From the NCBI GenBank assembly GCA_036785375.1, contig JAWMAR010000007.1, positions 11,160,001 to 11,224,000 of the forward strand: a stretch of 64,000 bases of DNA. Reading direction: 5' to 3'. A program made the position numbers and the translations under genes. The DNA is from Leucoraja ocellata. Lineage: Eukaryota. The notes under the pieces were generated by a model, which saw only the letters and a program-made list of their open reading frames with translations, was not told the origin of the DNA and made no database searches. Below, piece after piece: positions 1,497-62,502 of the stretch (its first letter is position 1; every line of letters begins with the position of its first letter).

Positions 1497-2258
1497 TGTT
1501 AATTCTGGTCAAATTGGAGATGCCAGGACACTAAAATTGTGTAAAGGCTTCGGGTCTGCTAGGCCATTTGGTCAATTTAAATGTGCCTTCTGCAGAAATG
1601 GGACAAGCTGCAGAATGATGTCAGCTTGTCTGGAGCCTAGATACGAGTTGTAGGAAAAGAATGGGACTTCTGCGGATTCTTACAATTAGGTGTAAATTGC
1701 ATGAAACGGATTGGGTGAATGCAAACCAGACATATACATTGTTAATATTGTTCCAAAGCTTTACTTTGCTAGATGTTGATTGGATTAAGTGTTGAGCCTT
1801 GTCTAGGTTTCTTGAATAACAAGGCACATGTTGCTATGTTTGCTTCCTTCCAGAAGCTCTGTTTGAATACAATGTATTAGTTACTGTATTATTGGGTTAG
1901 GGAAATGTCTATCATGTACTGTGTTAATCGATATCTGTTATTGGACTGTAAAGAGTCCACCCCCATATGATTCGGCCCCTCAAGGTTCGGGCACCTATAA
2001 AAGGCCACTCCCACGAGGTCCTGAGTCGATCTTCTGGGAAAACGTTTGGGACTGTGCGACTGTTTGGAGTGTCTCTGCTTGCACAAGGCTAGGAGAGCTT
2101 GGCCAATCAGATACAAGGATCGAACCCACAGTGGTTAGGTATAGTAGTGAGGAACTGTTATTGTGTATTTCCAAAATAAAATTTAGATGCGTAAGGGCTT
2201 GACTCGGTATCTTATTGACGGAAACTAGACTGGGGGGAAGCGTAGAATGATCTTTACA
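1497..2258 (+). mobile_element. Putative solo LTR inserted in CR1
   Basis: Non-CR1 block interrupting the CR1 fragment; TG...CA ends, TATAAAA at 1996-2002, AATAAA at 2175-2180. No clean TSD; left end may instead be TGTAAAG at 1540. Confidence 0.5.
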
Positions 2259-2702
2259 AGGATGTACAAGGATGTACCCGGATTTGGAACGGTAACGACT
2301 GATGAGGGATAGTTAGCATGGCTTTGTGTGTGGAATTTGTGTGTGACTCATGAATTTGACTGAGCTTTTGATGAGGCGATGAGTCTATTGATGAGGGCAG
2401 AGCTGGTACACATTGCCTGCATGGACGTTAACATGGCCTTTGCCAAGTTCTCACATGTCTTACCATTCTGGAAGATTAAATCACATGAGGTCTAGGGTGA
2501 ATGAGCCAATTGGATATGAATTTGGCTTGGTGGAAGGTGGTGGTGATGGGTTGCTTCTCAGAATGGAGGCCTGTGACTAGTGGTGTATCACAGGGATCGG
2601 TGCTGGGCTCACTCAGTATGAAATGGGTTTGATGTGTTCCCCAAGGGGTGTCCTCGCAGATGTGTGTATTTTGCAGCTCACGGTGTGTTTGGTGGTCCTT
2701 AC

Positions 2703-2780
2703 CAGTCTCCTCCTCTTTGCAGGGAGGTCTTTGAATATGCACAGTACTGTACAGAGTGTTATTCTGATACTCCTGGGGAT
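2703..2780 (-). CDS. Cytoplasmic exon, copy A: DPQEYQNNTLYSTVHIQRPPCKEEET (ITSM TxYxxV)
   Basis: tgtgttcttttcag|AT...ACTG|gtaagg, 78 nt, phase 1/1, open. Confidence 0.75.
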
Positions 2781-5700
2781 CTGAAAAGAACACAGATTGT
2801 TGTTGCATTCCAGCATCGCTCCCCCACTGTATTCTACCACTCAAACCACCCACTCCCATTTAAACGACATTGGGACAGGTACTTGGTTTGGAAAGGTGTA
2901 TAGGGATATGGGCCAAATGCAGGCAATTGGGACTAGTGTGGATGGGCATTTTGGTTGGCTTGAGCAAGTTGGACCAAAGAGCCTGTCTCTGTGCTCTATG
3001 ACTCTATGAGTCCCCACCTTTGATAATCACTGTCTCTTGCCTGTTCCGATTGCCCCTCCTATAGTGGTCCATCTTTTGCCAAGACTGTTCTTCACCCCTC
3101 ATTAGGATACGTGGCATGCCCCAAGAGAACCCTCGCTGCTTCTGTACAGAACCGTACTGCAGAATAGACAGCATTGTACTTCCAGGTCTAACGCTTGGCT
3201 GCCCGTTGGTGGGAAACGGAAAATAAACAACACCAGGATCTCTAGTAACTCTATGTCCTGGGTCTTTGTTACTAATTCCACCATGTCTGGCCTTTGCTGC
3301 ACCTGCCCTGAATGTTGAATATGGAGAGCTCTGGATCACAGGCTCGCTGGGAAGCCCAGTGTATATTGTCAGTGCCAGTGGATGGTTCTAGTCAGTACAT
3401 CAAGGGTTTGCCTCCCAGCCCGTTGGGGGCACTATTTTACATGGGGCGTCCACACCACCACGTTGTTTCACAGCTCACCGTGTGCTTACTGTTCCTTACC
3501 TATCTCCACTCCTACTCGAGAACGGCTTTGAACGTGAACAATGCTGTAAATGAGGGCATGGCTTTGTGTGTGGAATTTGTGTGTGAATTTGACTGAGCTT
3601 TTGATGAGGCGATGAGTCTATTGATGAGGGCAGAGCTGGTACACATTGCCTGCATGGACGTTAACACGGCCTTTGCCAAGTTCTCACATGGCTTACCATT
3701 CTGGAAGATTAAATCACATGAGGTCTAGGGTGAATGAGCCAATTGGATATGAATTTGGCTTGGTGGAAGGTGGTGGTGATGGGTTGCTTTTCAGACTGGA
3801 GGCCTGTGACTAGTGGTGTATCACAGGGATCGGTGCTGGGCTCACTCAGTATGAAATGGGTTTGATGTGTTCCCAAGGGGTGTCCTCGCAGAGGTGTGTA
3901 TTTTGCCGCTCATGGTGTGTTCAGTGGTCCTTACCAGTCTCCTCCTCTTTGCAGGGAGGTCTTTGAATGGGCAAATTGCTGTACAGATTGTTATTCTGAG
4001 ACTCCTGGGGATCTGAAAAGAACACAGATTGTTATTGCATTCCAGCATCGCTCCCCCACTGTATTCTAACACTCAAACCACCCACTCCCATTTAAACGAC
4101 ATTGGGACAGGTACTTGGTTTGGAAAGGTGTATAGGGATATGGGCCAAATGCAGGCAATTGGGACTAGTGTGGATGGGCATTTTGGTTGGCTTGAGCAAG
4201 TTGGACCAAAGAGCCTGTCTCTGTGCTGTATGACTCTATGAGTCCCCACCTTTGATAATCACTGTCTCTTGCCTGTTCCGATTGCCCCTCCTATAGTGGT
4301 CCATCTTTTGCCAAGACTGTTCTTCACCCCTCATTATGATACATTGCATGCCCCAAGAGAACCCTCGCTGCTTCTGTACAGAACCGTACTGCAGAATAGA
4401 CAGCATTGTACTCCCAGGTCTAACGCTTGGCTGCCCGTTGGTGGGAAATGGAAAATAAACAACACCAGGATCTCTAGTAACTCTATGTCCTGGGTCTTTG
4501 TTACTACTTCCACCATGTCTGGCCTTTGCTGCACCTGCCCTGAATGTTGGATATGGAGAGCTCTGGACCACAGGCTCGCTGGGAAGCCCAGTGTATATTG
4601 TCAGTACCAGTGGATGGTTCTAGTCAGTACATCAAGGGTTTGCCTCCCAGCCCGTTGGGGACACTATTTTACATGGGGCGTCCACACCACCACGGTTGTT
4701 TCACAGCTCACCGTGTGCTTACTGTTCCTTACCTATCTCCACTCCTACTCGAGAACGGCTTTGAACGTGAACAATGCTGTAAATGAGGGCATGGCTTTGT
4801 GTGTGGAATTTGTGTGTGAATTTGACTGAGCTTTTGATGAGGCGATGAGTCTATTGCTGAGGGCAGAGCTGGTACACATTGCCTGCATGGACGTTAACAT
4901 GGCCTTTGCCAAGTTCTCACATGTCTTACCATTCTGGAAGATTAAATCACATGAGGTCTAGGGTGAATGAGCCAATTAGATATGAATATGGCTTGGTGGA
5001 AGGTGGTGGTGATGGGTTGCTTTTCAGACTGGAGGCCTGTGACTAGTGGTGTATCACAGGGATCGGTGTTGGGCTCACTCAGTATGAAATGGGTTTGATG
5101 TGTTCCCCAAGGGGTGTCCTCGCAGATGTGTGTATTTTGCCGCTCACGATGTGTTCGGTGGTCCTTACCAGTCTCCTCCTCTTTGCAGGGAGGTCTTTGA
5201 ATGTGCACAGTGCCGTACAGAGTGTTATTCTGATACTCCTGGGGATCTGAAAAGAACACAGATTGTTATTGCATTCCAGCATCGCTCCCCCACTGTATTC
5301 TATCACTCAAACCACCCACTCCCATTTAAACGACATTGGGACAGGTACTTGGTTTGGAAAGGTGTATAGGGATATGGGCCAAATGCAGGAGATTGGGACT
5401 AGTGTGGATGGGCATTTTGGTTGGCTTGAGCAAGTTGGACCAAATAGCCTGTCTCTGTGCTCTATGACTCTATGTAGGTATGTTGCAAAACCTACCTGAA
5501 TCGTCGTTGAGAATCTGCCCCAGGCTGTGTGCGCAATTTTGGCGCTGTTTAGAGGGGGCGTGTTTAAAACGCGATTTTTACTAGGCAGTTGCAATCGAAA
5601 ATGTTCAGCCTAGTAAATCATTAATGGAAAATCGCTGAAAGAACCCGTCGCAAAAGGTATTATTAGTTTTTATGGCCTTGTATAATAGTTATAGTAGTTT

Positions 5701-8700
5701 AAAAATCACTCTCTAAACCCGCGACCTCTCGCAGCCCCAGGGTTTTATAAAGCAAACAATTAAAGGTATGTACCTTATTTTTACATTAAAAAGGGCTTCT
5801 TAAGAACCCTGTCTATAAAGTTTTCTATAGCGAGTAGCTCATTTTGGGCTCTTTATATCCCGCAGTATTTTTCTGGGCGTTTGAGGGCACAAATCCAGCG
5901 CAATGTGAACGTTCTAAACCAGCGCCTTCACAGGAACCCACTAGAAAGCCGATTTAAATTGACTTTAATTTACAGCAATTGAACACTAAATTCCTTCCAT
6001 TTGGCCTATAAATTGATGTAAATGAGATTTAAAAATCATGTTTTATTGTGAATTATTTGTGAATATTATTGGGGCACTTAGGCTATTTAAAAATGTTAAT
6101 CATTTATTAAGAAATGGATAGATGTTTAGATCTAGTAATTGAAGTTTGAAATTAGCTACAATTGGGTAACTAACTAATTAAATGCTTTAATTTCAGGTCA
6201 TCCAAGTAAGATTATTTTATATTTGTTTCGGAATGGTTCAATCTATGATAACTGAAAATTTCATTCAGTTCTCTTAATTTTTAAGAAGGTTATGGGCTTT
6301 TGACTGTCCATGATCACAGCTTTTTTGTTATGTCCATAGAAAATCAATAGGGAACATGATGCTAATTTCCGAGTATGAAAATGGCCATAACTTTTTTATT
6401 ATTTGAGATATGAAAGTGAATTAGGTGTCAAATTAAACTTATTTTTATGCTGTATCTGATGGGATAAATTGAAGACTTGATTTTTTAAATCTCAAACTTT
6501 TGTAACATTGCTACTCTATGAGTCCCCACCTTTGATAATCACTGTCTCTTGCCTGTTCCGATTGCCCCTCCTATAGTGGTCCATCTTTTGCCAAGACTGC
6601 TCTTCACCCCTCATTATGATACGTGGCATGCCCCAAGAGAACCCTCGCTGCTTCTGTAGATACAGAACCGTACTGCAGAATAGACAGCATTGTACTTCCA
6701 GGTCTAACGCTTGGCTGCCCGTTGGTGGGAAACGGAAAATAAACAACACCAGGATCTCTAGTAACTCTATGTCCTGGGTCTTTGTTACTACTTCCACCAT
6801 GTCTGGCCTTTGCTGCACCTGCCCTGAATGTTGGATATGGAGAGCTCTGGATCACAGGCTCGCTGGGAAGCCCAGTGTATATGGTCAGTACCAGTGGATG
6901 GTTCTAGTCAGTACATCAAGGGTTTGCCTCCCAGCCCGTTGGGGGCACTATTTTACATGGGCCGTCCACACCACCACGGTTGTTTCACAGCTCACCGTGT
7001 GCTTACTGTTTCTTACCTATCTCCACTCCTACTCGAGAACGGCTTTGAACGTGAACAATGCTGTAAATGAGGGCATGGCTTTGTGTGTGGAATTTGTGTG
7101 TGAATTTGACTGAGCTTTTGATGAGGCGATGAGTCTATTGATGAGGGCAGAGCTGGTACACATTGCCTGCATGGACGTTAACATGGCCTTTGCCAAGTTC
7201 TCACATTGCTTACCATTCTGGAAGATTAAATCACATGAGGTCTAGGGTGAATGAGCCAAATGGATATGAATTTGGCTTGGTGGAAGGTGGTGGTGATGGG
7301 TTGCTTTTCAGACTGGAGGCCTGTGACTAGTGGTGTATCACAGGGATCGGTGCTGGGCTCACTCAGTATGAAATGGGTTTGATGTGTTCCCAAGGGGTGT
7401 CCTCGCAGATGTGTATATTTTGCTGCTCACGGTGTGTTCGGTGGTCCTTACCAGTCTCCTCTTTGCAGGGAGGTCTTTGAATGTGCAAATTGCTGTACAG
7501 AGTGTTATTCTGAGACTCCTGGGGATCTGAAAAGAACACAGATTGTTATTGAATTCCAGCATCGCTCCCCCACTGTATTCTATCACTCAAACCACCCACT
7601 CCCATTTAAACGACATTGGGACAGGTACTTGGTTTGGAAAGGTGTATAGGGATATGGGCCAAATGCAGGCAATTGGGACTAGTGTGGATAGGCATTTTGG
7701 TTGGCTTGAGCAAGTTGGACCAAATAGCCTGTCTCTGTGCTCTATGACTCTATGAGTCCCCACCTTTGATAATCACTGTCTCTTGCCTGTTCCGATTGCC
7801 CCTCCTATAGTGGTCCATCTTTTGCCAAGACTGTTCTTCACCCCTCATTATGATACGTGGCATGCCCCAAGAGAACCCTCGCTGCTTCTGTACAGAACCG
7901 TACTGCAGAATAGACAGCATTGTACTTCCAGGTCTAACGCTTGGCTGCCCGTTGGTGGGAAGCGGAAAATAAACAACACCAGGTTTATCAAGGGTTTGCC
8001 TCCCAACCCGTTGGGGACACTATTTTACATGGGGCGTCCACACCACCACGTTGTTTCACAGCTCACCGTGTGCTTACTGTTCCTTACCTATCTCCACTCC
8101 TACTCGAGAACGGCTTTGAATGTGAACAATGCTGTAAATGAGGGCATCTGGAGAGTAATAATAATAATAATAACTTTATTTATAAAGCACTTTAAACAAC
8201 TGCAGTTGCCACAAAGTGCTGTACATGAGAACTCATGGACAAGAATTTATTACAAACCATTAAAAACCGTAAAACAAAGGACTATAAAACAGTAAAAATC
8301 AAAAGACATTAAAAGCACTAAAAACAGGAGCAATGTCTCAGCCAGTGTCGAAAGCCAGTGAATAAAAATGAGTTTTTAGGGTGGATTTGAAGATGGACAG
8401 TGAGGGGGCCTGTCTGATGTGCAACGGCAAGGTGTTCCAGAGTGCCGGAGCAGCAACAGAAAAGGCTCTATCCCCTCTGAGCTTCCGCTTAGACCTTGGT
8501 ACCTCAAGGAGCAGCTGATCAGCTGACCTGAGGCACCGGGCAGGAGCGTGTGGGTGGAGCAGCTCAGAGAGGTAAGGCGGGGCGAGCCCATTCAATGATT
8601 TAAAAACAAATAAAATAATTTTTAAATGAACTCGAAAGTACACCGGGAGCCAGTGAAGGGAGGCCAAAATTGGCGTAATGTGCTCCCTCTTTCAAGTTCC

Positions 8701-11700: not shown

Positions 11701-14700
11701 TTGCTGCAGGAGCTGGATCATGAAAGCTGGCCTTTACTTTCTGCATCTCTTCCTCCTGGTTACCTCTGTGCAAATTCCAAATGATAACCATCACTGCACT
11801 CACCAACATTCCTGTCCAATTCTCTCGGAGTTGGGACTGCCTGGGTGGCTGCCCTGTTTCTTGTCTCTGTGTTTAAATTAACAACACTGTAAATAGGATC
11901 CCCTTCAGGCTCCTGTGAACCTGCCAAAGACACAAAAAAGCAATGCGTATTTCAATGGAGAAATTAGAGCTCCCAAACTGTCCACCCCATCCCCTCCCAC
12001 AGGGTCAAAACTGAAGGGAATCCTGGAGTAATCGCAAAATGCAGAACTTTCCAACCCTATCCTCAGGCGTGGTGGAGGGTTACATAGATGAGGTATTTTT
12101 GTGCAAATCTATGAGATACATTGATCAGGTATTGTTACTTTGGGAATAATAGGATCAATTCCAAATTACAATGACCTTTCAAAACCAAAGCTGGTGTATT
12201 AGATATAATATTGGTCTCCTTACCCTAAAAAGCAATGTACAGGTAATTCCGCTATACCACGAATGCTGCATTCTTAAGGAACATCTTATTGTAAAAAATT
12301 ACATTCTGAAAATAATTGGGCCAATGAGAAAAAGGAGGTAAGGGGCTAGTGATTATGAGGCTTGCAATAACAATGTTATTTCTCCCACTGGTTTTTTAAA
12401 AACAGAGATCTATTTTATAGCTCCAAGTTTAGTTTTGTAGCTGCAATCTACAAATACTGATGGCTCAATGTTACATTGTTTAATAGAGTATCACTGCACA
12501 CATGTCAATTTAAATGATTGCTTGGCCACCCATGATGACCTGTATTCATAAGAGACAGTGGTGACTGCTTACTGCAGGGAGGTTACATGAACATGTTTTT
12601 TTCTCCCCAGGTTGTTTTTTCCAAGATAGCTTTTTTTCTGCTTTCCAAAGTAACTTTTAACTGGATCTCTACTTCCTGATAGAGATTATTTTATAACCAA
12701 TTCAAGCCGCATAATAGCATTACCTAATTTAGCAATCGTGTTGTAGCCAATTTGCGATTTCAAAACCTATGTTGAGCAGTACTACCTGTACTTACTTTGC
12801 AGGTTGAGCAGCAAAGGTTCATGAGGCTGGTTTTTGGGATGACAAAGAGATTAAATAGGTTGGACCTTCAATCTTTAGAGTTAAGGACAGGTGTCCAATA
12901 CAAAATACTTCCAGTAGGTTCGACAGAGTAGATTAATTCCCATGACTGAGGAATCTGGAATCTTAGTGCAAGCCCTGGGCCTTAAGGAGAGTCTTTTAAG
13001 TATTAATATTCCACTTGAACACACAACCTGATCTGCTCTGAGAGGGATTGTCTTTGCTGATCTAATTAGAAGGCTGTTGGAGGTAGGGAAGGAGGGTAGG
13101 TGGTAGCGACAATTGAAAGGCCAGTTATTAAATGTGGGTTTGAGCTCTGCTTTTCCAAAGAATGTCCTCAATATGAAAAGAAGTTTTGGCAGATTCTCCT
13201 ATTACCTGGCTCTGGTCCTTGTGGTTTCCGACCATTGGCCATCCTGGCATCAACACAACACACACGCTGCTGTGAACCTGTCAAAGACAAAGGAAAGTAT
13301 TCTGTGAGAATTCTCTCTAGATACCTCTCCCACTCTCCTCCTTTAACACACTTCTCTACTCTCAGCTCATGGGCCTCTGAGCCCATCATGCTCCCATCTG
13401 GGCCTACTAATTCCCTGCACAAGTTCTTTTCTTTCATAATCTTCCTTAAAGGCCCTGTCCAATTTCTGTTCCTTAAACTTTGCATATGCATCCTTTTCCT
13501 TCGACACTAAATTTACAACCTCTCATCATTAAATCACTCTCACTTCCTGATGCAAACTTTCCCAATAGCAGCTGGTCCATAACTACTTTACCCGGTAAAA
13601 AACAAAGTGCTGGAGAAATTCATAGGGCCATGCAGGCTCTGTGGTGGAGAGAAATGGATAGATAATGTTTTGGGTCGCGATCCTTCATCAGATTGATGCA
13701 GTAGAGGGGAGAAAGCTGGCAAGGAGAGTTGAAGGGGAACGGGTGTGGCAAAAACTGACAAATGTTGGTAGATTCAGAAAAGGGTTGAGTGGCAGATGGG
13801 TGGAGCTGTTGCGGCATTCCGGCGGCGACCCGACTTCGGAGGCTCAGCCGCAGGCCCAGGGGACAACATCGTCGGGAGCTCACAGGTCACAGGTTGGTGA
13901 TCTGTTTTTCCGGTGCTCCCACTACAACAGCTTCGTCTGCTGGACTGGAGGGCGGCAGTTTCAACCACCCCGGGCCGCGGAGTTTGAGCCGGCTCGTTCG
14001 CGGAGCTTGGATTCAGCCGTGGAACTGACTTACCATCACCCCGCGGGGTCACAACATGGGAAGCCTGAATCGCCTCAGCGCAGAGGGAGAACAAGGAAGG
14101 AAGAGACAAAGACTTTAAGATTTTTGCCTTCCATCACAGTGAGGAGGTGCCTGGTAGACTCACTGTGGTGGATGTTAAATTTGTGTTTATTGTGTGTTTT
14201 TGTTATTTATTATATGTATGACTGCAAGGCACGAAATTTCGTTCAGACCGGAAGGTCTGAATGACAATAAAGAATACTTTACTTTACAAAGGATTGAGAT
14301 AAAATGAAGACAATGAAGACAGATGTACAATCAAATAAGGAAGGAAGAAAACTGTGTAATATAAAACCAAAGGGCAGGATGTGTGTCTCAGTGGGCCTCC
14401 CTGTGTCCCAGTGGGCCTCCCTGTGTCCCAGTGGGCCTCCTTGTGTCCCAGTGGGCCTCCCTGTGTCCCAGTGGGCCTCCCTGTGTCCCAGTGGGCCTCC
14501 CTGTGTCCCAGTGGCCTCCTTGTGTCTCAGTGGGCCTCCCTGTGTCCCAGTGGGTCTCCCTGTGTCCCAGTGGGCCTCCCTGTGTCCCAGTGGGCCTCCC
14601 TGTGTCCCAGTGGGCCTCCCTGTGTCCCAGTGGGCCTCCCTGTGTCCCAGTGGGTCTCCTTGTGTCCCAGTGGGCCTCCTTGTGTCCCAGTGGGCCTCCT

Positions 14701-17700
14701 TGTGGCCCAGTGTTGAACACTATTCAGTACCAATCCTACCTTACCCCGGGATGTTCTGTTGTATTAATCATGCCACATGCTTGCTCAGTAGACTAACAAA
14801 AAGTTTGGCATTTCTCCAACACACTAGCCAATTTCTACAAATGCACCATTGAAAGCAAGACAAAGTGCTGGAGTAATTTAGCAAGTCAGGCAGCATCCCT
14901 GGAGAATGTGGATAGGTGACGTATAGGGTCGGGACCCTTCTTCAGACTGATCGGGATACCGTCAGGATGCTTCACAGCTTGGAAGCAGCTCCCCAAGACT
15001 AAGACATTTCAGAGAGTTGTGAATGTAGTCGAGTATATCACACAGACCACACTTCCCACTATTGACTTCATCTGCACTTCACGCTGCCTTAGGAAAGCAG
15101 TGAACATAATCAAGGATATTTTTCACCTCGGTCATCCCCTATTCTCCCCTCTCCCGTTGGGCAGAAGATACATTAGCTTAAAGACGCAATCCACCAGATT
15201 CAGGAACAGCTTCTTCCCCCACTTTTGCCAGACTACTGAACGGCCCTCCCACAAACTAAGGTGTAGTCCCGATCTTCCAACTTACTTCAATGCGACCCAT
15301 GCATTTTTTCTCTTTTTATCTGAACTTTTTCTGGAGCTGTTACACGGTAATGAAGGAACTATGGATGGCTCAGTGGCACAGCGGTAGAGTTGCTGCCTTA
15401 CTGCACCAGAGACCCGGGTTTGATCCTGACTATGGGAGCCATCTGTATGGAGTTTGTAAGTTCTCCCTGTAACCACTTAGGTTTTCTCCGAGTGCTCTGG
15501 TTTCCTCCCACACACGATAGACATAAGAATTAATGATACAGGGTGCTCGCTGGTCGGCACAGACATGGTGGGCCAAAGGACCTGTTTCCATGCTGTATCT
15601 CTACTAAAGTCTAAAACACAATATTATGTACTCTGGTATTTTTCTCTTTACACTGCCTGTTGTACTTGTATATGGATTGATTGTTCTCATGTATGATATG
15701 ATTAGATTTGACCAAATAACATACAAACAAAGATTTTCACTGTATCACAGTAGAAGTGACTATAATAATAAATTAATACATGAATGCAAGCATTTGTTGC
15801 TGTTGTACAAATCTAAGGACCTAATCAAGAACCTATCAATCTACGCTATAAAATTTCCACTGACTAGACCTCCACTTTTGCCTGTGGCATTGAATTCCAC
15901 TGATTCATCAGTCTCTGGCTAAAAAAAAAAAAATCTTCCTCATCTCCATTCTAAAGGTTCATCCTTTTATTCTGAGTCTGTGTTCTCTGGTTCTGGACTC
16001 TCTCACTGCTGGTAACATTCTCTCCATGCCCACATGTCCTTTTGATAGGTAGCATAGAGACCAAGGACCTATACATTTATACCTGAGTTCATATCTTCTT
16101 GCATTAAAGGCCAACATTACATTTGTTTTCCGAAATCCACACGTTTGATACATAAAGTGAGTTATATGTGAACATTGGTATTCCCCAATCTGTAACCGCT
16201 GGAAGAGCATTGAAGTTTGACAGCTTTTTTTCCTGAAGTGGATTATCTCACATTTTCTCACATTCCCATGTTGTTTCCCAACGTACTTGGCTGGTCGATA
16301 TATTCTCTTCAAACCTTGAGCCATCACATTCCCACTCAGTTTCAAATCATCTGCAAACTGGTCCATGATTGAATCGGAACGCTCAGAACCTTTTTCAAAT
16401 GATACCCAAGCATTTGAAGAACAGCGAGGATCTAAGGACAGAATCACAGCCGGACCTTCCCACAAATTCATCGGAGGGCAAGGGCAATGAATACCTTATC
16501 TCAGGACTGTATTATTAAGAACAGGAAATTCTGACCCTGTTATACCCGTCTATGGACAAGGTCTGTCAGGGTAGCAATGGTGAGGGCAGACTTGACCCTT
16601 CATGGGGTACAGCCCCAGTCCACTAGAACTGAAGATTTAACCTTGGCACACGATGTCTGTGCCGACCATAATGCCAAATTAAACTAATCATATCTCTCTA
16701 CACATGGTTGATCCCTTTCCATTCCATGTATATTTACATGTATAAATGCTCTTTAAACATTGCTAGCGTGTCAGCTTCCACACCTCCCCTGGTTGCACGT
16801 TCCAGGCACCAACCATTCTGAATAAATGGCACTTCTTAAATCTCCGTTAAAAACATTCCTACTCTCACCTTAACCCATGCTCTTTAGTTTTTGACATCTC
16901 AACCCTGGGGAAAAAAGACTAACTACTATTTCTATATGTCTCAGAATTTGACATTCTTTGATCAGCATCAGGTGTTCCAGAGAAAAACAATCCAACCTCT
17001 CCTTATAGCTAAAATCTTCTAATCCAGGCATTATTCTGTAACCCTCTGCACCCTCTCCAAAGTTTCCAAATCCTTCCTGAAATGTGGTCACCAGAACTGG
17101 ACAAAATACTCCAAATGTGGCCTAACCAGGGATGACTGGCCTCCTGTTCACATTTCCGGCCTATAATATTTGAAAAAGCCACCAGTCCCAAGAACACTCA
17201 CAACAGCCCACAATGTAGTTGTTATTGGCAAACTCACATTTTTTCAAAGACATGAGAGCAAATACCATCACAAGGAGAACAACAGCCAATATGGGTAATC
17301 CAATGTAGAGTTCCAGCCACAACCGTCTCCCATCATTGGGTAGGCAGATCTCACGCGTGTCCATCTGGTGTTCATTCACAGCCACACACGTGTAATTCCC
17401 TGGCAGCCTGGGGTGAAGCAGCTTTCCCACAGTCAGTAGTTTCTCTGGATCATGTGTGACTGTCATCTCACTACTGGTCACGGGCAGTGAGCTGTTCCCT
17501 GGGCCGATCCATGTGATGTTTGCAGGAGGCTTCCCTTCAGCCCTGCACACGAGGGTGCGTTCTCCAGCTCCATTGTCGCTCACAACGAACAGCTCCAGGA
17601 TGGTGGCTGGGACTTGGAGAAGGAAGAAATGTATTAAATTCATTGAATTAATCACTGTTGGTGTGCGGATAAACTCCATCTGAATGGGGATTGGAAGGAC

Positions 17701-20700
17701 ACATCTAGGAGACTGCAGTGAAATATTTGCAGATATGATAGTGTCTTTGAGAAGCACATGGATCTACAGGGAATGGAGGGATATGGATCATGTGTCGGCA
17801 GATGATATTAGTTTAACTTACAGAACCATTATATTCTGCACAGATATTGCGGGCCAAAGGGCCTGGTCCTGTGCTGCACTGTTCTATGTAATATTCAGTG
17901 AGAGAACATACAGGATCCCGGAGTCTATGTGAATGAAAGAGACAGTGGAGAGAGGGTTCACTAAGTGGGGGTGGGTGTGATTAAAGACTGTGGACTCTTC
18001 CCGTGGATTCCCCTTCATCCAGCGGACAGTGATGGGGTTGGGATTCTTGTTCAAGGGGCTGAAGCAGCAGGGCAGTGTGGCTGAATCTCTTCTCTTCCCA
18101 ATCACCATCGATGTGTTCTTCTTTCCATCTTGTATAGAGAAAAGTTGTATTTAACAATCTATTCCACATGGTTTATAAAAATACATCATCCATGCCTGTG
18201 ACATTGATTCCCCATCCCACTCCCGCTCTGATCTGTCTGTCTCAGACCTCCTGCATTGTTCTAACGAGGCCCAATCTCAAGCAACCTCATCTTCTGTCTG
18301 GGCAGCATGAAGCTTTTGTGTTAACATTTAATACAACAATTTCAATAACTTGCTTAAGGGCCTGTCCAACTTATGCGATTATTAGGCGACTACTGGCGAC
18401 TAGGCGGTCACCACACGGTTGCCGGGTGTCACATGTAGGGTCGTGAGTCGTCTCCTCAAGTCGCCCAAAGATCCGTAGCGTTTTTCTGGTCGCCGCAGGA
18501 TTTTGAAATGTTCAAATCTTTTTGGCGACACTCAGCGATCTTGGGCTTGTCGTAGCTTGTCTTCTCCTGACGTAGGTGCTGTCGTAAGTTGTCGCCAGGA
18601 TAACATAGGTTGTTGCCAGGATGATGTATGTTGTCGCTGGTGCTGACTTCGATGAATTCATTTGGGGACTACCTACGTCAACCTGCGTAAACCGGCGACA
18701 GCTACCGGCGTCAAGAGAAGTCTTCAATTATCACCGACAGGGTGGTAGCTTGTCGTAGCTTGTCGCGGGTGGAGGTAGGTTGACTGGTTATCGTAGGTTG
18801 TCACCTGTGTGGTCGTAGGGTTGTCTAGGTGTGGTCGTAGGTGGACGTCCTAAGTCGTGACGATTGAGTCGCCGGTTGTCATGGCTTAACGTCGACTAGG
18901 TGGTTGGTTGTTGTAGACGTTGTCGTAGGGGGGGTCCAGTCACCGGTTTTTCACAACCTGCTACGACCATGACAGTCACTGGCAGTTGCCTAAAAAATCA
19001 CCTAAGTGGGACAAGCCCTTTACTGTTAAGTATAAGAACTGGCCAGAACTGCCTCAAAAGTCAATATTACCTGACCTAAACCACCATAGCTAGAGGCTGA
19101 TGACAATATCACTGGAGATGCCACAAGTCTCCCGTCAACACTAACATTGGAGATGAGACAGTGGCGTTCACCTCTGTTCAAACATGAGAAAGTGAAGCCA
19201 ATTGTAAGAGTGCAGTCCACATGTGGCAGCTCAAATATCAAACCCACACATGGGCTGTAGTGTTGCTTATTGACAATGCAAGAGTATCATGAGGAAGACA
19301 GATGAACGTAGAACTGTCGAAAGATACTACAAATGTTGATCTAATACAGATATAGGCAGAGAAATGGCAGATGGAGTTTGATCCGAACATATGTGAAGTG
19401 TTGTCTTTGGGAGGTTGAATGCGTGGAAAATATACAAGGGCAAGACCCTTAATACCACTGATGTACAGAAAAATATTGGGATCCAATTCCATAACTCCCT
19501 GAAAATGGCAACACGTTAAAAACGTGTACAGTTTTCTTGCTTTCATTGGTCAAGGTACTGTATACAAGATGTGTAGGAAGGAACTGCAGATGCTGGTTAA
19601 AACCGAAGATGGACACAAAACGCTGGAGTAACTCAGCGGGACAGGCAGCATCTCTGGAGAGAAAGGATGTGTCACGTTTCAGGTCAAGAAGAAGATACTT
19701 GACCCGAAACATCATCCATTCCTTCTCTCCAGAGATGCTACCTGTCCCGGTGAGTTACTCCAGCTTTTAGTGTCTATCTACTGAATACAAGAGTCAGGAA
19801 GTCATGTTGTAGCTCTATACAACTTTAGTTACGACACTGGGATTATTGCATTCAGTTTTATGTGCAGTTTTCACCCATTACAGGAAGGATGAGGAGACTT
19901 TGGAAAGGGTTCAGAAGAGGTTTAGCAGAATGCTGCCTGGATTAGAGGGTAATAGTTATAATAAAAGGTTGGACATACTTGAACTGTTTTTCTGGACTCT
20001 TGAAAGTTTATAAAAATATGAAAGACATGGATAGGAGAGAGAGTCAGAACCTTTTGCCTACGGCGGGAATGTCAATGAATAGACGGCATTGTGATAAGGA
20101 CAGATGGGAAAAGATGAAAGGAGATATGTGGGGAAAGTTATTGTTTACACAGAGGGTGGTGGGTGCCAGGAAAATACTGTTAGGGGTGATGGAGGCAGCT
20201 ACGATAGTGGAGTTTTAGAGACTTTTTGAAATGCAGGTAATGGAAGAAATGCATCACCTGCAGGTAGACGAGATTAACGTAGCATCATGTTCGGTACAGA
20301 CATTGCGGGCCAAAGGGCCTGTTCCTGTGCTGGTCTACACTGTCAGTGGGAGCTCATTCCTCTTAAGGTTGTGCAATATGATATTATCGTTTACAGCATA
20401 ACATACGTTTCCTTACCCACAACCTGCAGTTTCATCTCATCCTGAGTCACAGTCGTCAACGCTGAACTCCTGATATAAACGTGACAGAAGTAATCACTGG
20501 CGTCATTCAGTTTGAGTCCCTTCACTCTGATGGAGGCGTTTCCCTGCTCCAGATTTCCCACCAGCTCATATCGATTTCCTTTATTTACATTTTTCGGAAT
20601 GTTATTTGCTGCTGGGCGGGGAGAAGTGTCACGAAAGACAACAGACCATTTTGGTGGATTCCTCTTCATCCACTTGATGGTGATGGAGCTGGGATTCCTG

Positions 20701-23700
20701 TTCGAGGGACTGAAGGAGCAGGGCAGTGTGGCAGTCGCACCCTTCCTCCCAATCACCATGGATGCTCTGTCATTATCACCTTGCAGAGAGAAGAGTTTTA
20801 AAGTGTGAATATGATGTAGTAATTGAATACAATAACCACACAGTCTTTATCAATAGTTCATCCATACTTGTGACTTGGATTCTCCATCCCATTCCCACTC
20901 TGATCCACCTGTTCCTGACCTGCACTATTTTATTAAGGGCCAATCTCAAGTAAAGACATCTCAGTTTCAGTCTGGCCAGGATGGAGCCTTGACCTTGAAG
21001 ACTGGGAACCGGAGAGGAGGATGGAGGGTGACTAAAGGCACGGTTAACTGAATTAGGTGGGGTGGGGGGCAGGTCTTAGGTTCTGCACCCGAAGCACTTC
21101 TCATTACCTCTGACATCTGCACTAATCAGGAATCTACTTATCTCTGCCTTAAATATATCCACTGACTTTGCCTCCACAGCCGTCTGTGGCAATGAATTCC
21201 ATAGATTCACCACCCTCCTACCAAAGAAATTCAGCCTCATCTCCTTCCTAAAAGAACGTCCTTTAATTCTGAGGATTAAACCTCTCGTCTTCGACTCTCC
21301 CACAAGTGGAAGCATCCTCTCCACATCCAAGCCTTTCACTATTCTGTCTGTTTCAATGAGGTCCTCCCTCATTCTTCTAAACTCCAGCAAACATAGGCCC
21401 AGTGACGTCAAATATTCATCTGATGATATCCTACTCATTCCTGGGATCATTCTTGTGAACCTCCTCTGGACCCTCTCCAGAGCCAGCACATCCTTCCTCA
21501 GATATGGTGCCTAAAATTGCTCACAATATTCCAAATGTGGCCTGACCAGCGCCTGAAAGATTCTCAGCATTACATCCCTACTTTTGCATATAAACCCTCT
21601 CGAAATAAATGCTAGCATTGCGTTTGCTTTCTGTACAACTGATTTGACTTGCAGATTAACTTTTTGTGAATCCTGCACCAGCATTCTCAAGTCACCTTGC
21701 ACCTCTGATTTCTGGATTCTCTTCCCATTTAGAAAATAATCAACGCCTTTAATCCTATTACCAAAATACATGACTCCACACTTTTCCACACCTTTCCATC
21801 TGCCACTTCTCTGCCCACTCTCCCAACCTATCCAAGTTCTTCTGCAGAGACCCTGCTTTCTCTGCACTACCTGCCTATCCACCTATTTTTGTATAAACCG
21901 CAAACTTGGCCACAAAGCCTTCAATCCCCTCATCCAAATCATTAATATACAACGTGAAGAGCAGCGGCCCCAGCACCGAGCCCTGCGGAACTCTGCTAGT
22001 AACTGGCAGCCAACCTGAAAATGCCTGGTTAACCGAATCAGGAGGGGTGCAAAATGGCAACTGTTGCCCAGACTCAGTGGGTTCTTCTGTACATGATGTA
22101 CTAACCGGGGGGATTGTGCTTATTTATGTACGGTGATATTCTTACTGATCTGTATGCAAAAAAGTATTTCACTGTACTTGCTACATGTGATAATAAAGAA
22201 ACCATTGAACCGAAAATAGACACAAAATGCTGGAGTAATTCAGCGGGCAGGCAGCATGTCTGGATAGAATGAATCGGTGACGTTTCGGGTCGTGATTCTT
22301 CTTCAGGAGAACTGAGTCAGTATCGCAGATGCTGTAGAACTCGCCAGTTCTGATACAAACAGCGAGCAAGTCACCAGAAATTGTTCTATTCACGGTTGAC
22401 CCATTGAACCATTGAGTCAACATTGAATGCAACAATTTCTGGTAACTTTCTCACTGTTTGTATCAGAAGTTCTGCAGCAGGTTATCCATCTGCAATACTG
22501 ACTCAGTTCTCCTCTCTCCACTGACGCTGCCTGATCTGCAGCGTGTTTCTTGCAGCTGACGTGCATTTTGCAGCTCACGTGCATTTTGCAGCTCTGTTTC
22601 TATCTTTGTTTGTGTTCTCTGTCTCCAGTTTCCTTCCTTAATTTATCAACCAGATAATTTCATCAACAGCAAACCTAGACTCACCCTTTCAGAGATATTT
22701 CCTATTTCCAATCCACCCCTCTATACAACCTCTGCAACTTCAGCTAACTTATTTTAAGTTGCAATAATTGTTCTGAGAATAACTGATTAATATTCCATTT
22801 TGCTTATCTTCAGTAGAACTGGTTAGTTCTGATAAAAGAGAGAAAAAGTATCATCCAAAATTCTTGAATTCAATGGAGTCTGCAATGATGCAGAGAGCCC
22901 TGTTCTTCAAATTGCATTAGACGGGTTATAAGGAAGTCACAAAAAATAGTCAGAGGGGGAATTGCATGGATGATTAAGATTACAAGCACCAGAAAGCTCA
23001 GGATTAACCATGTAGAATGAATAAAAGGTTTTCCCTCGTTCCCGCGCCCATCAACTGCATTTATTCCTTGTGAAAGCAGGCAACATAATGAAGGATCACT
23101 CACACCCGAGTTACTCTCTCTTCTCCCCTCCCCCATTACCGGAACCAGAGGCTGACAACAATGTCACTGGAGGTCCCATGATTCTCCCATCAGCACCAGC
23201 AATGGAGATTAGACATGATGTTTATCTATGTTTAACCACTAGAAAGTGAAGCCAATCACAAGAAAGTAGGCTCAACAAATGGCAGCTGAAATGATCAACC
23301 TGTCCATTCTCTCCCGCACACACACGTATCTCCAGATACATTATCACCATCGCTCCAAGATGGTGGCTGAAACCTAGAGAGGGATAAAAGTCACTGTTAT
23401 TCATTGGTGCAGGGGGAGAACCAGGGAGGGGTGAAGATTTGAAAGAGACCCAGCAGGAGAATGGAGTGAAATAGTCAGAGAGGAAACAGAACGAAGCTCA
23501 TTCTTCTCACAGTTGTTCAATGTGATTTTATCATTTACTCCTCAACACTGACTGTTTCCTTACCGAAAACCTGTAGTCCCGTCTCATCCTGAGTCACCTG
23601 ATAATTTTTCTTCTTAGAGGATTCAAAGATCCAAACATGACAGAAATAGTTGTTGGTGTCATTCAACATGAGTCCCCTCACTCTGATGGAGGCGTCTCCA

Positions 23701-26700
23701 TTGTCTACGTTTCCCACCAGCTCATATCGACCTCCTGTATTTACATTGTCAGTGCCGGGACCACTTGTGGCCTAGGAGCGGGTATGTTTAAAGACAACGG
23801 ACTCTTCCCATGGAGTCCCCTTCATCCAGAGGATAGTGATCACTCTGCTATTTGCACTCGAGTGTTTGAAGTTGCAGTTCAGTGTGGCACCACCTCCTCT
23901 CTTCCCGATCACCATAGATGTACCTCTACTACATTTTCTACTGCATGTTCTACTACATGGTGATTTTCCATCGAATTATAAGAAGATTGCAGATGGAATA
24001 TGAAGAGGTGGAGAAGGTGTGTGAGATTAACAGAGACACGCACCGAGTGATAATACCTACACAGAAATGAGAGATAAGATAGTTAAACAGAACAATGCTC
24101 AAGGGTGCCAAGGAACATGTGGAAAACTCCTTCTGAGACACAGTTAACTAAATCAAATGTGACACATTGAGGCAATGGTTAGTGAGGTGCGAGACGCTGG
24201 GCTCAATGATGAAAGTATGAAGTACAAGATTACGATAGCTACATTGCCATAGAAAAAATCAGGAGAGAAACAAATGATTGTCAGTTTGATGATCAGAACT
24301 GGGAAAAGTTACAATAAAACAAATGTCTTTTATGTTGCAGAGAAGTGGGAATGTGGAGGAATCTATGATAGGTTGGGGACAGGATTGCCCTGGTGATTGG
24401 CTGTTGTGGTCACTTGATTGGTAAGTGAATGAGAGTAAATATTGAGGTCAGCCAATATAACAGTATCACACGGCTTGATCTCTTGTTGCTACTGCCAGGT
24501 AGAAGGTTCAGGAAATGTGAACCTTTACCTCCAGGTTCAAGAAGACAATCTTGCCATTTAACAGGTTGTTTTGATTTCACTAAAGATCTCCCTCCCGAAC
24601 TGTGATTCAGCAATCCCGTTATTTGTCCATAACAGGTCAGTGCTGAAGTTTGGTTGTGTTTAGGTTCATTGTGGCATCATCAGGCTCTTGCACCAAACTA
24701 TTATGCACTTTGTATAAGGTTGCTTTAAATACTTCAAATGTTAATCAAATGCTATTGCCATGTATAACTGATATTGTATTATTGTTTGTTGTTAATGTAT
24801 TATTATGTTGCATCAATGTGCCTGCAAAGTTGCAGCAATGAATAATTGTGTTGTTCTAATCCCAGTGCATATGACTATTAAACACACCTGACTGGAATAA
24901 TATGGGGATTGTGTGGAAAGAATAGGGGGACTGGGACTGATGGATGTCAATGGACAGAGGGCTCTGGGGAATAGATGGATTTCACAAATACTTGTGGAAA
25001 GTTTATTTCCTCCTGCTTATGATTCAAAAACCACATGTCAGGGAAAAATAAGTCAGACATTCAGGACTGAGGTCAAGAAATTCCCTGCAATAATGTTTGT
25101 GAACCTACTGAATTTTCCATCCCAGAGTTTAGTTTATTGTCACCTGCACCAAGGTACAGTGAAAAGCTTTTATTGCATGCTAACCAGTCAACGAAAAGAC
25201 AATACATGATTACAATCAACAATCCACATTATGCAGAAGCTGTGGGTAAAACGTAGTTGAGTAAGTTCAAACCAAAGGTCCACAGTTTTTCTGGGTCTCA
25301 TGGAGATCACTGTCTGGGGATCTCTCAGTGAATGAACAAGGTCCAGAATTAGCCATGATTTTATGGATGAGAGTTGGTTCGAGCATCTGTGTTCTGACTC
25401 CTCCCATTTCACGTAATAGTCTAAGCATTGTTTTAAAAACCAGGGACTATCCCTTCCTGTTCACTAACACTGCCTGAACAAATGCTGTCTCTCCAATCTG
25501 CCAGGGTCAATTTTGATTCTCCATTTCACCATTCTACACTTAATGCTGCTTCGGAAAAGCAACCACATTATCAAGGACAACTAATACCCTGACATTCTCA
25601 CACCCAGAAAATACAAAAGCTTGAAAGTAGGTACCACCAGATGGAAGAACAACTTCTTACCTATTGTTAGAGTCTTGAATGGACCTCACAAATGGTAGGG
25701 TTGAATTACCCGATCTTCCAATCTACCACGTTAAACGCTTGCACTACTCTTTAGTAGCACTTTCACTGTAGCTGTCATACTACATTCTTCACTTTGCTTA
25801 TTTTCTCTTTTACAGTTCCTGATGCACACATCTAAGGTATGATTCTTCCAACCTCATCTATTGCATTCTGTGTCCCCAATATGATGAATACTTGTGTTCA
25901 GTCTGCGAAGGCCTGCTGGAGCTCCTGGTTCCGACGCTTTTTAACTCCTCTTTCTGTTCCCACACTGACCTGACTGTCACTGGCCTTGTGTATTATCAGT
26001 GTGAGAACACACACAAACAGGAAGAACAGCACCTCATGGTCAGCTTGTGTAACTTATAACCTAACCGTATGAACACTGAACTCTCAAAGTTCAAGTAATA
26101 CCTCCCTCCCCGCCCCCTCCACCAGCCCACTGTATACACATTGCTCCCATTATCCCTGTCACACTGCTCCTTTCATCTCCCGTATTCATCTCCCGTCCTC
26201 GAATCCCATAGTTCCTTCTATCACGTCTTTCACCTGCCCATCTCCCCTGGCCCATTCCATCCATTTGCCTCCGCCTTTACATTTTGTTTCCTTGTCTGAC
26301 AACTTTTACCACTTTTCACCACTCGCCATTATCACTGTCTCCACCCATCTGATAAGCATCTCCCCCGTGCCCCCCCCTCCCCCACCTCCATCCACCTCTC
26401 ATTGGGCAAGCTTTGCTCCGTTCCCATCTTTCTCCCTACTACTCCATCAGTTTGAAGGGAACCGACCCGGATAATTGCCTGTCCATTTCCTCCACCAATG
26501 CTGCTTGACCCACTGTGTCTTCAGCACTTTGTGTATTGCTCATGGTTCCAGCATCTGCAGTTTCTAGTGTCTCAATGGGATGATTTGTCTGGATGGCACT
26601 CGGAAAAATATCACTGTATCTCAGTGCAATAGACAATAATAAACCAATACCAATATCTGAAACTTAACTGGAGGAGATATAATATGTGACTATAACAGCA

Positions 26701-31842: not shown

Positions 31843-32574
31843 TCTCTTCTCTCGTTGAGCTTTCAAATGCCGTAAGTCTATCCACTGGACGAGTAGAACC
31901 GAGACTCCTACAGTTTTCTGTAGTTTTCTGAATTTTACATTTAACATAGAGTGTAAAAGGGTGCAAGAGACTTTGCAAGAATTGTCATACAGCTTCAAAT
32001 GGAGAAGTCAATTTTGACACTTTGCATTTCCATCAACCAGTCCTTGTCCAGCAGAATCTGAGTGGAACTGACAGCAGCAACAAGGGCTTCACCCTCTGGC
32101 TGCTGTCGATGGTACGCCAGCAATATTTCAAGTCCACACCGCACTTTTATCTTGATTAGAAAGAGCTTGCAAAATTCTCAGAAAGTTGACCAGGAAGTAA
32201 GAAGCAAGATTGTTCCTTGTTTATAACTTGAAGCAAAATATGAAAAGGATTGCAAAATGCATTTGTGCTGGGTGATGATGAAATTATATGTTATCAAGTT
32301 TTTTTAATAATTTTATAGCTTTGATTATGCCATGGATAAATTTGTCACAAATGTAAGAAACCATACCTGATAGTAATCAGGTTCTTGTTAATTACAGTTG
32401 TACCTCATTTAACCAAATATTTGACATGCAGAAAAACAAATTGCAGGAGGTCCTCAATGCATTAGGTTGCATCTGTGGAGGCAGAGTAATGGTTGACGTT
32501 TCAGGTCAAGACCCTGCATCATCCCTCAATGCATCACCAAATATTTGATATGTGATACCGTGCATAATTCTTAA

Positions 32575-61642: not shown

Positions 61643-62502
61643 TAGGTATGTTACAAAACCTACCTGAATCGTCATTGGGAATCTGCCCACAGCCAGGTCC
61701 GTGATTTTGGCGCTGTTTGGAGGGGGCGGGTTTAAAACGCGATTTTTACTAGGCTGTACTAATCGCAGATGTTCAGCCTAGTAAATCATTAACGAAAATC
61801 GCTGCAAGACCCGGTCGCAAAAGGTATTATTAGTTTTGTAGGCCTCGATAATATAGTTATAATAGTTTTAAAATTACTGTCTGATTCCGCAACCTCTCGC
61901 AGCCCCAGGGTTTAATAAAGCAAACAATTAAAGGTATGTACCTTATTTTTACATTAAATGGGGCATATATATAACCCTATATATCAAGTTATCTATAACG
62001 AATAGTTCATTTTGGGCTTTTTATATCCCGCAGTATTTTTCTCGGCATTTGAGGGCACTAATCCAGCGCGATGTCAACGTTCTAAACCAGCGCGTTCACA
62101 TGAACCCACTAGAAAGCCGATTTAAATGGGCATTTATTTACAGCAATTGAACACTAAATTCCTTCCATTTGGCCTATAAATTAATGTAAATTAGATATAA
62201 AAATCATGTTATATTGTGAATTATTTGTGAATAATCTTTGGACACTTAGGCTATTTAAAAATGTTAATCTTTCCTTAAGAAATGGGCTTTTGACTATCCA
62301 AGATCACAGCTTTTTGTAATGTCCATTGAAAATCAATAGGGAACAAGATGCTAATTTCCGAGTATGAAAATGGCCATAACTTTTTTAATACTTGAGATAT
62401 GAAAGTGAATTTGGTGTCAAATTAAACTTATTGTTATGCTTTATCTGATGGGATAAATTGCAGACTTGATTTTTAAAATCTCAAAATTTTGTAACATTGC
62501 TA
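61643..62502 (+). mobile_element. MITE copy 3 (internally deleted), 7-bp TSD CTTTAAT
   Basis: Same termini and interior as 5475-6513. Confidence 0.92.

What the first reader, a model, noticed from the sequence alone, without database searches (positions are those of the whole stretch)
2316..8150. Recent tandem amplification of a phosphotyrosine-motif exon builds a multi-ITSM/ITIM receptor tail
Seen: what looks like a junk 1.23-kb repeat carries, on the minus strand of every unit, a 75-78-nt open exon with strong AG/GT sites and phase 1/1. The motifs are TLYSNL (7452-7526), TLYGTV (5169-5246), NLYSNL (3935-4012) and TLYSTV (2703-2780). They lie downstream of, and in frame with, the TM and cytoplasmic exons of the Ig receptor, and upstream exons add PIYSVV and LIYSIV. 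Known: TxYxxV/I is the ITSM (SAP/EAT-2, SHP-2 docking) and [ILVS]xYxx[LV] is the ITIM; Siglecs usually carry only a few such motifs. Inference: the tail could hold six or more motifs, with signalling strength tunable by array copy number and by exon skipping, since every exon is frame-symmetric.
Basis: partly seen in the sequence, partly recalled or inferred. Interest (0 to 1): 0.92.

Follow-up and report, generated by a model that had tools for sequence, protein, structure and literature searches.

The report
Amplified tyrosine-motif exon in skate Siglec-like receptor
A skate immune-receptor gene carries four fresh tandem copies of a real 25-residue signalling exon, which could lengthen its inhibitory tail, but no RNA evidence yet shows that the extra copies are used.

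Summary
Window 8147-2323 (minus strand) is four head-to-tail units of about 1.23 kb that are 97.5-98.0% alike. Each unit carries a 75-78-nt open segment with identical AG and GT sites and phase 1/1. The segments encode TLYSNL, TLYGTV, NLYSNL and TLYSTV.

The segment is a genuine exon by orthology. RefSeq models of a Siglec-15-like receptor in Leucoraja erinacea (24 of 25 residues identical) and Rhinoraja longicauda splice it after the LIYSIV exon. All upstream exons (V-set domains, C2+TM, three cytoplasmic exons) are collinear and phase 1/1.

The multi-motif tail is not shown. The Leucoraja model uses one copy and then reads through its donor. The Rhinoraja model has one copy followed by a terminal CIYATV exon, which lies outside this window. 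Two RNA runs of related species gave no reads on any exon, so the test was uninformative.

The copies differ mostly by replacement changes (6 of 8), and copy 3 has lost the motif. Each unit also carries an acceptor-less LIYSIV pseudo-exon.

Duplicated and alternatively skipped tail cassettes occur in shark and chimaera relatives, so this is a new variant of a recurrent theme.

The parts
2323..8147 (-). Tandem array of four units: U1 8147-7077, U2 7076-4793, U3 4792-3560, U4 3559-2323. The junction shows a 4-nt ATGC microhomology.
   Evidence: 47 variable sites in 1068 ungapped columns
7452..7526 (-). Copy 1 of the xLYSxx exon, 75 nt, phase 1/1. It encodes (D)PQESQNNTLYSNLHIQRPPCKEET. A second donor lies after 7431.
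   Evidence: 24 of 25 residues identical to L. erinacea P0175
5169..5246 (-). Copy 2, 78 nt, TLYGTV.
3935..4012 (-). Copy 3, 78 nt, NLYSNL. The motif is degenerate, with T->N and H->P changes. The downstream second donor is GT->AT, and there is a stop in the read-through frame.
2703..2780 (-). Copy 4, 78 nt, TLYSTV.
8088..8147 (-). LIYSIV (ITIM) exon, 60 nt, phase 1/1. Its acceptor is the AG just behind the (TTA)n tail of an inserted repeat.
7017..7076 (-). Acceptor-less copy of the LIYSIV segment, also present at 4733-4792 and 3500-3559. The donor is kept. The only in-frame stop-free AG lies 33 nt upstream and has a weak pyrimidine tract.
5476..6513 (.). AT-rich interspersed repeat inserted into U2 only. 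It carries the only AATAAA/ATTAAA signals on the gene's strand inside the array.
   Evidence: (loose ends at 5475 and 6513-6515, very high depth)
11804..11920 (-). PIYSVV cytoplasmic exon, 117 nt, phase 1/1.
   Evidence: 39 of 39 residues identical to P0175
13206..13277 (-). Membrane-proximal cytoplasmic exon (SQQRVCCVDARMANGRKPQGPEP), 72 nt, phase 1/1.
17238..17612 (-). C2-type Ig plus transmembrane exon. The hydrophobic core is uncharged, and the exon ends ...SLKK in phase 1.
17944..18141 (-). Truncated fourth V-set exon. Only the 5' half is present.
20394..20792 (-). V-set exon 3.
23550..23918 (-). V-set exon 2.
27024..27449 (-). N-terminal V-set exon. It is Siglec-type and keeps the CRVE arginine.
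31792..31947 (-). Leader exon (approximate bounds).
   Evidence: 94% identity to A. radiata P0021 residues 1-52

Best explanation
A 1.23-kb piece of the 3' part of a skate Siglec-15-like inhibitory receptor gene was duplicated in tandem to four copies. The piece runs from the first bases of the LIYSIV exon to about 380 nt past the next exon. It therefore multiplied the complete penultimate coding exon (xLYSxV/L, 25-26 residues, phase 1/1) together with its acceptor and donor. It also copied the LIYSIV segment, but without that segment's acceptor. The structure and the exon's identity are shown here. The following steps are inferred. All four copies have the same splice signals and are frame-symmetric, so the default outcome is that transcripts running to the terminal (CIYATV-type) exon beyond the window include several copies, probably in variable number. 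That would give a tail with one ITIM (LIYSIV), up to three TxYxxV/L switch-type motifs, one dead copy (NLYSNL), and the PIYSVV and terminal tyrosines. Once phosphorylated by Src-family kinases, such motifs would dock SH2 phosphatases or adaptors.
For: The array and identical splice contexts are shown. The gene is collinear with L. erinacea P0175 from V1 to the first array exon. The predicted acceptor is used in P0175 (...GVEI|DPQESQNNTLYSNL...). R. longicauda P0167 has the same exon once, followed by a terminal CIYATV exon. The first donor is conserved at protein level in Narcine (KEET|AEIYATV) and Mobula. All tail exons are phase 1/1. Contigs of a same-species DNA run (X17) match unit-specific stretches of U2 and U4 with no difference, and of U3 with 1 and 2 differences, at 1.4-2.0 times the depth of the flank contig. 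Relatives carry duplicated tail cassettes: H. perlo has two identical PVYSII modules plus one diverged copy, with isoforms differing by one cassette, and C. milii has two VIYSVV modules.
Against: No read or model shows more than one copy in mRNA. L. erinacea X1 reads through the donor of its single copy to a stop, and X3 stops after the LIYSIV exon. RNA runs X21 and X24 gave zero depth at 8001-8200, at most 0.43 at 2601-2800 and 0.17 at 7401-7600, and no splice joints. They are from other species, and only 5-6% of each run was read. The exon copies carry 8 variable sites in 75 columns against 39 in 993 elsewhere (Fisher p = 0.014), and 6 of the 8 are replacements. So nothing indicates constraint on each copy, and U3 has lost the motif. 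The repeat inserted in U2 carries five polyadenylation hexamers on the gene's strand. The terminal exon is not in the window.
Confidence: 0.45

Rival explanations
1. The amplification is real but silent. Transcripts use only one copy, or end by read-through or intronic polyadenylation in or before the first unit. The other copies would then be drifting intronic or downstream DNA with no effect on the protein.
For: Both L. erinacea models end by read-through, X1 inside the unit and X3 after the LIYSIV exon. The changes among copies look neutral (6 replacement, 2 silent). U3 is degenerate, with a stop and a lost second donor just downstream. Polyadenylation hexamers lie in the U2 insert. No RNA reads fell on any copy.
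Against: Read-through ends in Gnomon models can reflect missing or multi-mapping evidence in a repeat. There is no AATAAA or ATTAAA on the gene's strand between 7452 and 6400. Rhinoraja, Narcine, Mobula and Heptranchias all splice this exon type onward to a terminal IYA-V exon. Identical splice sites make selective use of one copy hard to explain.
Confidence: 0.35
2. The whole gene copy in this window is a decaying paralogue or pseudogene, so the array has no functional consequence.
For: The fourth V exon is truncated. Remnants of other transmembrane exons lie at 19208-19068 and 23307-23159. The ectodomain is only 74-91% identical to L. erinacea P0175, while two tail exons are 100% identical and the first array exon is 24 of 25. 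No expression was seen.
Against: V1, V2, V3, C2+TM and all tail exons are open, with intact splice sites and compatible phases. A truncated V exon can simply be skipped, because Ig exons are phase 1/1.
Confidence: 0.12
3. The array is an assembly artefact, that is, an over-expansion of a single unit.
For: No listed contig spans the whole stretch. One X17 contig laid on 7349-7563 carries a combination of states found in none of the four assembled units.
Against: The units differ by private substitutions (7-11 each), a 162-nt deletion and a 1-kb insertion, which collapse or expansion errors do not create. X17 contigs match unit-specific sequences of U2 and U4 with no difference, and of U3 with 1 and 2 differences.
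Confidence: 0.04

Closest known systems
Leucoraja erinacea LOC129695366 isoforms X1/X3 (XP_055488227.1, XP_055488229.1; RefSeq models)
   Same: Same exon order from V1 to the tail. The PIYSVV and LIYSIV exons are 100% identical at protein level. The first array exon is 24 of 25 identical and is spliced at the same acceptor.
   Different: The models contain one copy at most and end by reading through a donor. The ectodomain is only 74-91% identical, so it may be a paralogue's orthologue.
Rhinoraja longicauda LOC144611565 (XP_078286854.1)
   Same: Same tail plan: membrane-proximal exon, PVYSVV, LIYSIV, SLYSNV...PPCKEEET.
   Different: It has one copy of the exon. It uses the second donor (+GKAHGTH), has a terminal CIYATV exon, and its LIYSIV exon is longer at the 5' end (DPRDSPDP).
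Heptranchias perlo 'Siglec-12' isoforms X1-X3 and Callorhinchus milii LOC103188796/LOC103188801
   Same: Same receptor family. The tails are built of short D-P-Q-E-headed tyrosine cassettes. One cassette is present twice in identical form, and isoforms differ by exactly one 24-residue cassette.
   Different: A different cassette (PVYSII or VIYSVV) is duplicated, with two to three copies rather than four. The genomic unit structure was not seen.
Human Siglec-15 (PDB 7ZOZ)
   Same: It is the best solved-structure match of V1 (E = 1.6e-16). All 7 of 7 matches are Siglecs, and the arginine of the CRVE strand is conserved.
   Different: Human Siglec-15 signals through DAP12 (abstract start in the listing of PMC13711574). 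It has one V domain and, as I recall, a lysine in the membrane span and no ITIM. The skate gene has 3-4 V exons, an uncharged span and a long tyrosine-motif tail.
CD244 (2B4) and other SLAM-family receptors
   Same: They have several TxYxxV/I/L switch motifs in one tail. CD244 has four, the most in its family (passage in PMC3958483).
   Different: The ectodomain family (CD2/SLAM) is unrelated. The motifs are old and diverged, not near-identical tandem exon copies.

Membership tests
Siglec (sialic acid-binding Ig-like lectin) | N-terminal V-set domain of Siglec type with the conserved ligand-binding arginine | tested here: met
   V1 ORF (27021-27545) against PDB sequences: 7 of 7 hits are Siglecs, best is Siglec-15 at E = 1.6e-16. 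YCRVEL aligns with FCRVEF, and with the FFRMER arginine of CD33. That this is the essential arginine is recalled.
Siglec (sialic acid-binding Ig-like lectin) | Binds sialylated glycans | not testable with these tools
   Needs a binding assay.
Siglec-15 subfamily (activating, DAP12-coupled) | Charged residue in the membrane span, short tail, adaptor coupling | tested here: not met
   The span IGLPILAVVLLVMVFALMSL has no Lys or Arg, and the tail is long. Remnant exons of the charged-span type lie elsewhere in the window. The lysine requirement is recalled. DAP12 coupling is from the listing.
ITSM (switch motif) | TxYxxV/I/L (consensus as given in PMC3958483) | tested here: met
   3 of 4 copies fit (TLYSNL, TLYGTV, TLYSTV). 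NLYSNL does not. Phosphorylation and SH2 binding were not tested.
ITIM | [S/I/V/L]xYxx[I/V/L] (consensus recalled) | tested here: met
   LIYSIV fits. PIYSVV does not, because it has Pro at -2.
Tandem exon duplication | Head-to-tail copies that each keep the exon with both splice sites and the reading phase | tested here: met
   4 of 4 copies have identical acceptor and donor contexts and lengths of 75 or 78 nt.
Tandem exon duplication | The duplicated exons are included in mature mRNA | tested here: inconclusive
   Read laying on two RNA runs of related species gave no depth on any exon of the stretch, including the control LIYSIV exon.

The most novel reading that the evidence does not exclude
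The array is a copy-number-variable and sequence-variable cassette bank. Individuals and haplotypes would differ in how many switch-motif exons, and which ones (A-type SNL, B-type S/GTV), they splice into one inhibitory Siglec-like receptor, so inhibitory strength would be a polymorphic, quickly evolving trait. Four hints support this: the A-B-A-B pattern (5 sites against 1); the cluster of replacement changes on and just behind the tyrosine motif; a same-species contig with a combination of states absent from the assembly; and independent cassette duplications in a shark and a chimaera.
Probability: 0.2. Interest if true: 0.7.

Novelty: new variant of a known kind. Interest (0 to 1): 0.45.

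Why it matters
If the copies are spliced in, this would be a caught-in-the-act example of how immune receptors gain signalling motifs. One unequal-crossover event would multiply a frame-symmetric exon without disturbing the rest of the protein. It would also show that the oldest jawed-vertebrate Siglec-15 relatives include inhibitory forms with modular tails. My three literature searches found no paper describing this receptor family in cartilaginous fish. If the copies are silent, it is ordinary structural variation in a repeat-rich intron.

Tried and rejected
The RNA test was uninformative. No RNA run of the source species (organism B) was offered. I laid a PolyA run of organism C (X21) and an oligo-dT run of organism A (X24) on 2201-8200 at 90% likeness. 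Reads fell only on interspersed-repeat parts (2801-3000, 5401-6600, 7201-7400, 7601-7800), mostly at 90-95% likeness. Depth on the control LIYSIV exon bin was zero and no splice joints were listed, so nothing can be said either way.

I tried to judge copy number in organism C from X18 contigs. Three contigs at depth of about 49 tile one unit's worth. However, other bins (2601-2800, 5001-5200) show further contigs, so I reject a single-copy claim as unproven.

Pfam found nothing in the unit's long non-exon ORFs: 0 families for 2479-2859 and 3007-3387.

I considered selection on the copies. The exon is richer in differences than the rest of the unit (p = 0.014). However, 80 of 994 sliding windows of the same width reach 8 or more variable sites, and the hot patch runs about 50 nt past the exon. 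So I do not claim positive selection.

A search for a terminal IYA[TAV]V exon in all six frames of the window found none.

Word searches of earlier notes gave no details of the off-window exon.

Supplementary files of papers were not consulted, and none bears on the claims made.
Full report
WHAT IS THERE

The repeat finder reports four-copy families with spacings of 1232-1234 and 2280-2284 nt between 2351 and 8147. I cut the minus strand at the recurring start of the LIYSIV segment and obtained four units: U1 8147-7077 (1071 nt), U2 7076-4793 (2284 nt), U3 4792-3560 (1233 nt) and U4 3559-2323 (1237 nt). All six pairs are 97.5-98.0% identical over ungapped columns.

U1 lacks about 162 nt that the other three units have. 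U2 holds an AT-rich interspersed repeat of about 1.04 kb at about 5476-6513, bounded by loose ends in every run laid. The array ends in ...AAAGCCATGC followed by unique sequence, and it starts with ATGCCCTC. The junctions therefore share a 4-nt microhomology.

THE OPEN SEGMENTS

Each unit holds ...ttcttttcag|AT CCC CAG GAG ... GAG ACT G|gtaagg. The positions are 7526-7452 (75 nt), 5246-5169, 4012-3935 and 2780-2703 (78 nt each). All are phase 1/1, and they encode TLYSNL, TLYGTV, NLYSNL and TLYSTV.

Three things were missed.
- Each unit begins with a copy of the 60-nt LIYSIV segment. Only the first copy (8147-8088) is preceded by AG. The three inner copies have ...AAAGCC in its place. The only in-frame, stop-free AG lies 33 nt upstream, behind a weak pyrimidine tract of 11 of 18.
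- A second phase-1 donor (ACC|GTGAGC) lies 21 nt past the first. It is AT in U3, and U3 has a stop in that extension.
- No exon of the terminal IYA-V type exists anywhere in the window.

THE GENE

Several stretches are open on the minus strand and were scored by Pfam:
- V-set: 27021-27545 (E = 7e-7), 20394-20846 (E = 2e-14), and a half exon at 17887-18150.
- C2-type Ig followed by a membrane span: 17164-17763.

Proteins returned by the searches map collinearly on the window: leader 31947-31792, V1 27449-27024, V2 23918-23550, V3 20792-20394, half V4 18141-17944, C2+TM 17612-17238, then 13277-13206, 11920-11804, 8147-8088 and the array. The C2+TM exon ends in phase 1. The three following cytoplasmic exons (72, 117 and 60 nt) are all phase 1/1 with AG and GT sites.

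Against solved structures, V1's best match is human Siglec-15 (E = 1.6e-16). All 7 of 7 hits are Siglecs, and the arginine of CRVE is kept. V3 alone is less specific: its hits are antibody light chains and CD276, with Siglec-15 thirteenth. The membrane span has no charged residue. The gene is therefore a Siglec-15-like receptor of inhibitory build. The source is a skate.

IS THE SEGMENT AN EXON?

Three word-index searches and one full-library search gave relatives:
- 6 proteins of 106 candidates;
- 19 of 1538;
- 27 of 8000 scored;
- 354 at E <= 0.001, of which I read 9.

Two skate relatives are decisive.
- R. longicauda LOC144611565 (P0167) reads ...LIYSIVHVRRRSQVGAEM|DPAVSQNSLYSNVHIQRPPCKEEETGKAHGTH|GCIYATVVSPKEQLEDASGK.

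Narcine (…SLYSNVQSAPRAKEET|AEIYATV…) and Mobula end the same cassette at ET and go on to an IYATV exon. The exon is therefore real and old.

IS MORE THAN ONE COPY USED?

This is not shown. X1 of L. erinacea does not splice at the donor. It reads on for 73 codons through sequence that matches the unit's downstream part at 91-98%. X3 (P0166) reads through the LIYSIV donor to GKEQ-stop. Rhinoraja has one copy.

For RNA, no run of the source species (organism B) was on offer. I laid a PolyA run of organism C and an oligo-dT run of organism A, about 6% and 5% of each run being read, on 2201-8200 at 90% likeness. Depth was 0 in 8001-8200, at most 0.43 in 2601-2800 and 0.17 in 7401-7600. All substantial depth lay on interspersed-repeat parts at 90-95% likeness. 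No joint at any predicted junction was listed. Because even the control exon was uncovered, the test is uninformative rather than negative.

IS THE ARRAY REAL DNA?

- Contigs of run X17 (organism B, which holds 0.56 of the sampled words) match stretches that occur exactly once in the window. Two of them (2909-3030, 6746-6879) match with no difference, and two (4233-4436, 3334-3559) with 1 and 2 differences.
- Their depths are 180-247 against 126 for the unique flank contig. Their mean 31-mer multiplicity in the window is 2.1-2.7.
- The units also differ by a deletion, an insertion and 7-11 private substitutions each.
- An artefact is therefore unlikely.
- One X17 contig laid on 7349-7563 combines states (78-nt form, Tyr at the S/Y site, SNL core) that none of the four assembled units shows. 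This could be another unit or an allele.
- Copy number in organism C (contigs 3.3-4.4% diverged) could not be settled.

HISTORY AND CONSTRAINT

There are 47 variable sites in 1068 ungapped columns. Eight lie in the 75 exon columns, against 39 in the other 993 (Fisher one-sided p = 0.014). However, 80 of 994 windows of that width reach 8, and the patch runs on for about 50 nt downstream.

Of the eight exon changes, six are replacements (S/Y, T>N, S>G, N/T, L/V, H>P) and two are silent. This is the neutral expectation.

Five sites group U1 with U3 and U2 with U4, against one site for U1U2|U3U4 and none for the third split. The 3-nt loss in U1 sits in a GAG run, so its likeness to the L. erinacea exon (KQET) may be parallel.

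With 2-2.5% pairwise divergence, plus a later deletion and insertion, 'recent' is fair on the scale of species but not of individuals.

COMPARISON WITH RELATIVES

Ten of the 14 relatives' tails that I cut out hold two or more tyrosine motifs, and four hold none.
- H. perlo X1 and X3 carry the 24-residue cassette DPQEAGSVPVYSIITGTVSQQAET. It recurs in the same tail, identical but for one added residue at its head, alongside a diverged His-for-Tyr copy. X2 lacks exactly one cassette.
- C. milii models carry two VIYSVV modules.
- Tail-cassette duplication and skipping are therefore family traits already visible in RefSeq models.
- The present case is the largest and freshest seen here, and it affects a different cassette.

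Under the consensus TxYxxV/I/L (passage in PMC3958483), three of the four copies are switch-type motifs. The same passage says CD244, with four, has the most in the SLAM family.

My three literature searches listed no paper on this receptor family in cartilaginous fish. I saw listings only, except passages of PMC10440875 (not relevant) and PMC3958483.

VERDICT

- I give 0.45 to use of several copies, 0.35 to silent copies, 0.12 to a decaying gene copy and 0.04 to an artefact.
- Interest is moderate at 0.45. It would be higher if cDNA shows variable multi-copy inclusion.

Noticed in passing
[not shown]
   Followed up: partly
window 19068-19208 and 23159-23307: Remnants of a second kind of membrane-span/tail exon (…CLNRGERHCL…), like the short-tailed, charged-span Siglec-15 models of Rhinoraja and Pristis, lie behind V3 and V2. 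They point to a past of duplicated V/TM modules or paired activating forms.
   Followed up: partly
window 17887-18150: The fourth V-set exon is only half present. It matches relatives up to about residue 60 and then diverges.
   Followed up: partly
window 5476-6513, also 58022-58237 and 61932-62147: An AT-rich repeat of about 1 kb is present at least three times in the window. It has very high depth in all DNA and RNA runs laid. It is inserted in U2 only, with a short direct duplication of the target.
   Followed up: partly
window 13206-13277: The Rhinoraja model P0009 ('CD276 antigen homolog') ends in a peptide that is this same cytoplasmic exon read in another frame. That gives a short tail without tyrosine motifs. 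It is either a natural frame-shifted isoform or a model error.
   Followed up: no
window 7349-7563 (run X17): A same-species contig at depth 191 carries a mix of states (78-nt exon form, Tyr variant, SNL core) not found in any of the four assembled units. The array may be polymorphic or hold further units.
   Followed up: partly
window 7410-7514 and homologous parts of U2-U4: Fifteen of the 47 variable sites of the unit lie in about 105 nt covering the tyrosine motif and the 50 nt behind it. The cause is unknown and could be a conversion tract, a mutational hot spot or selection.
   Followed up: partly
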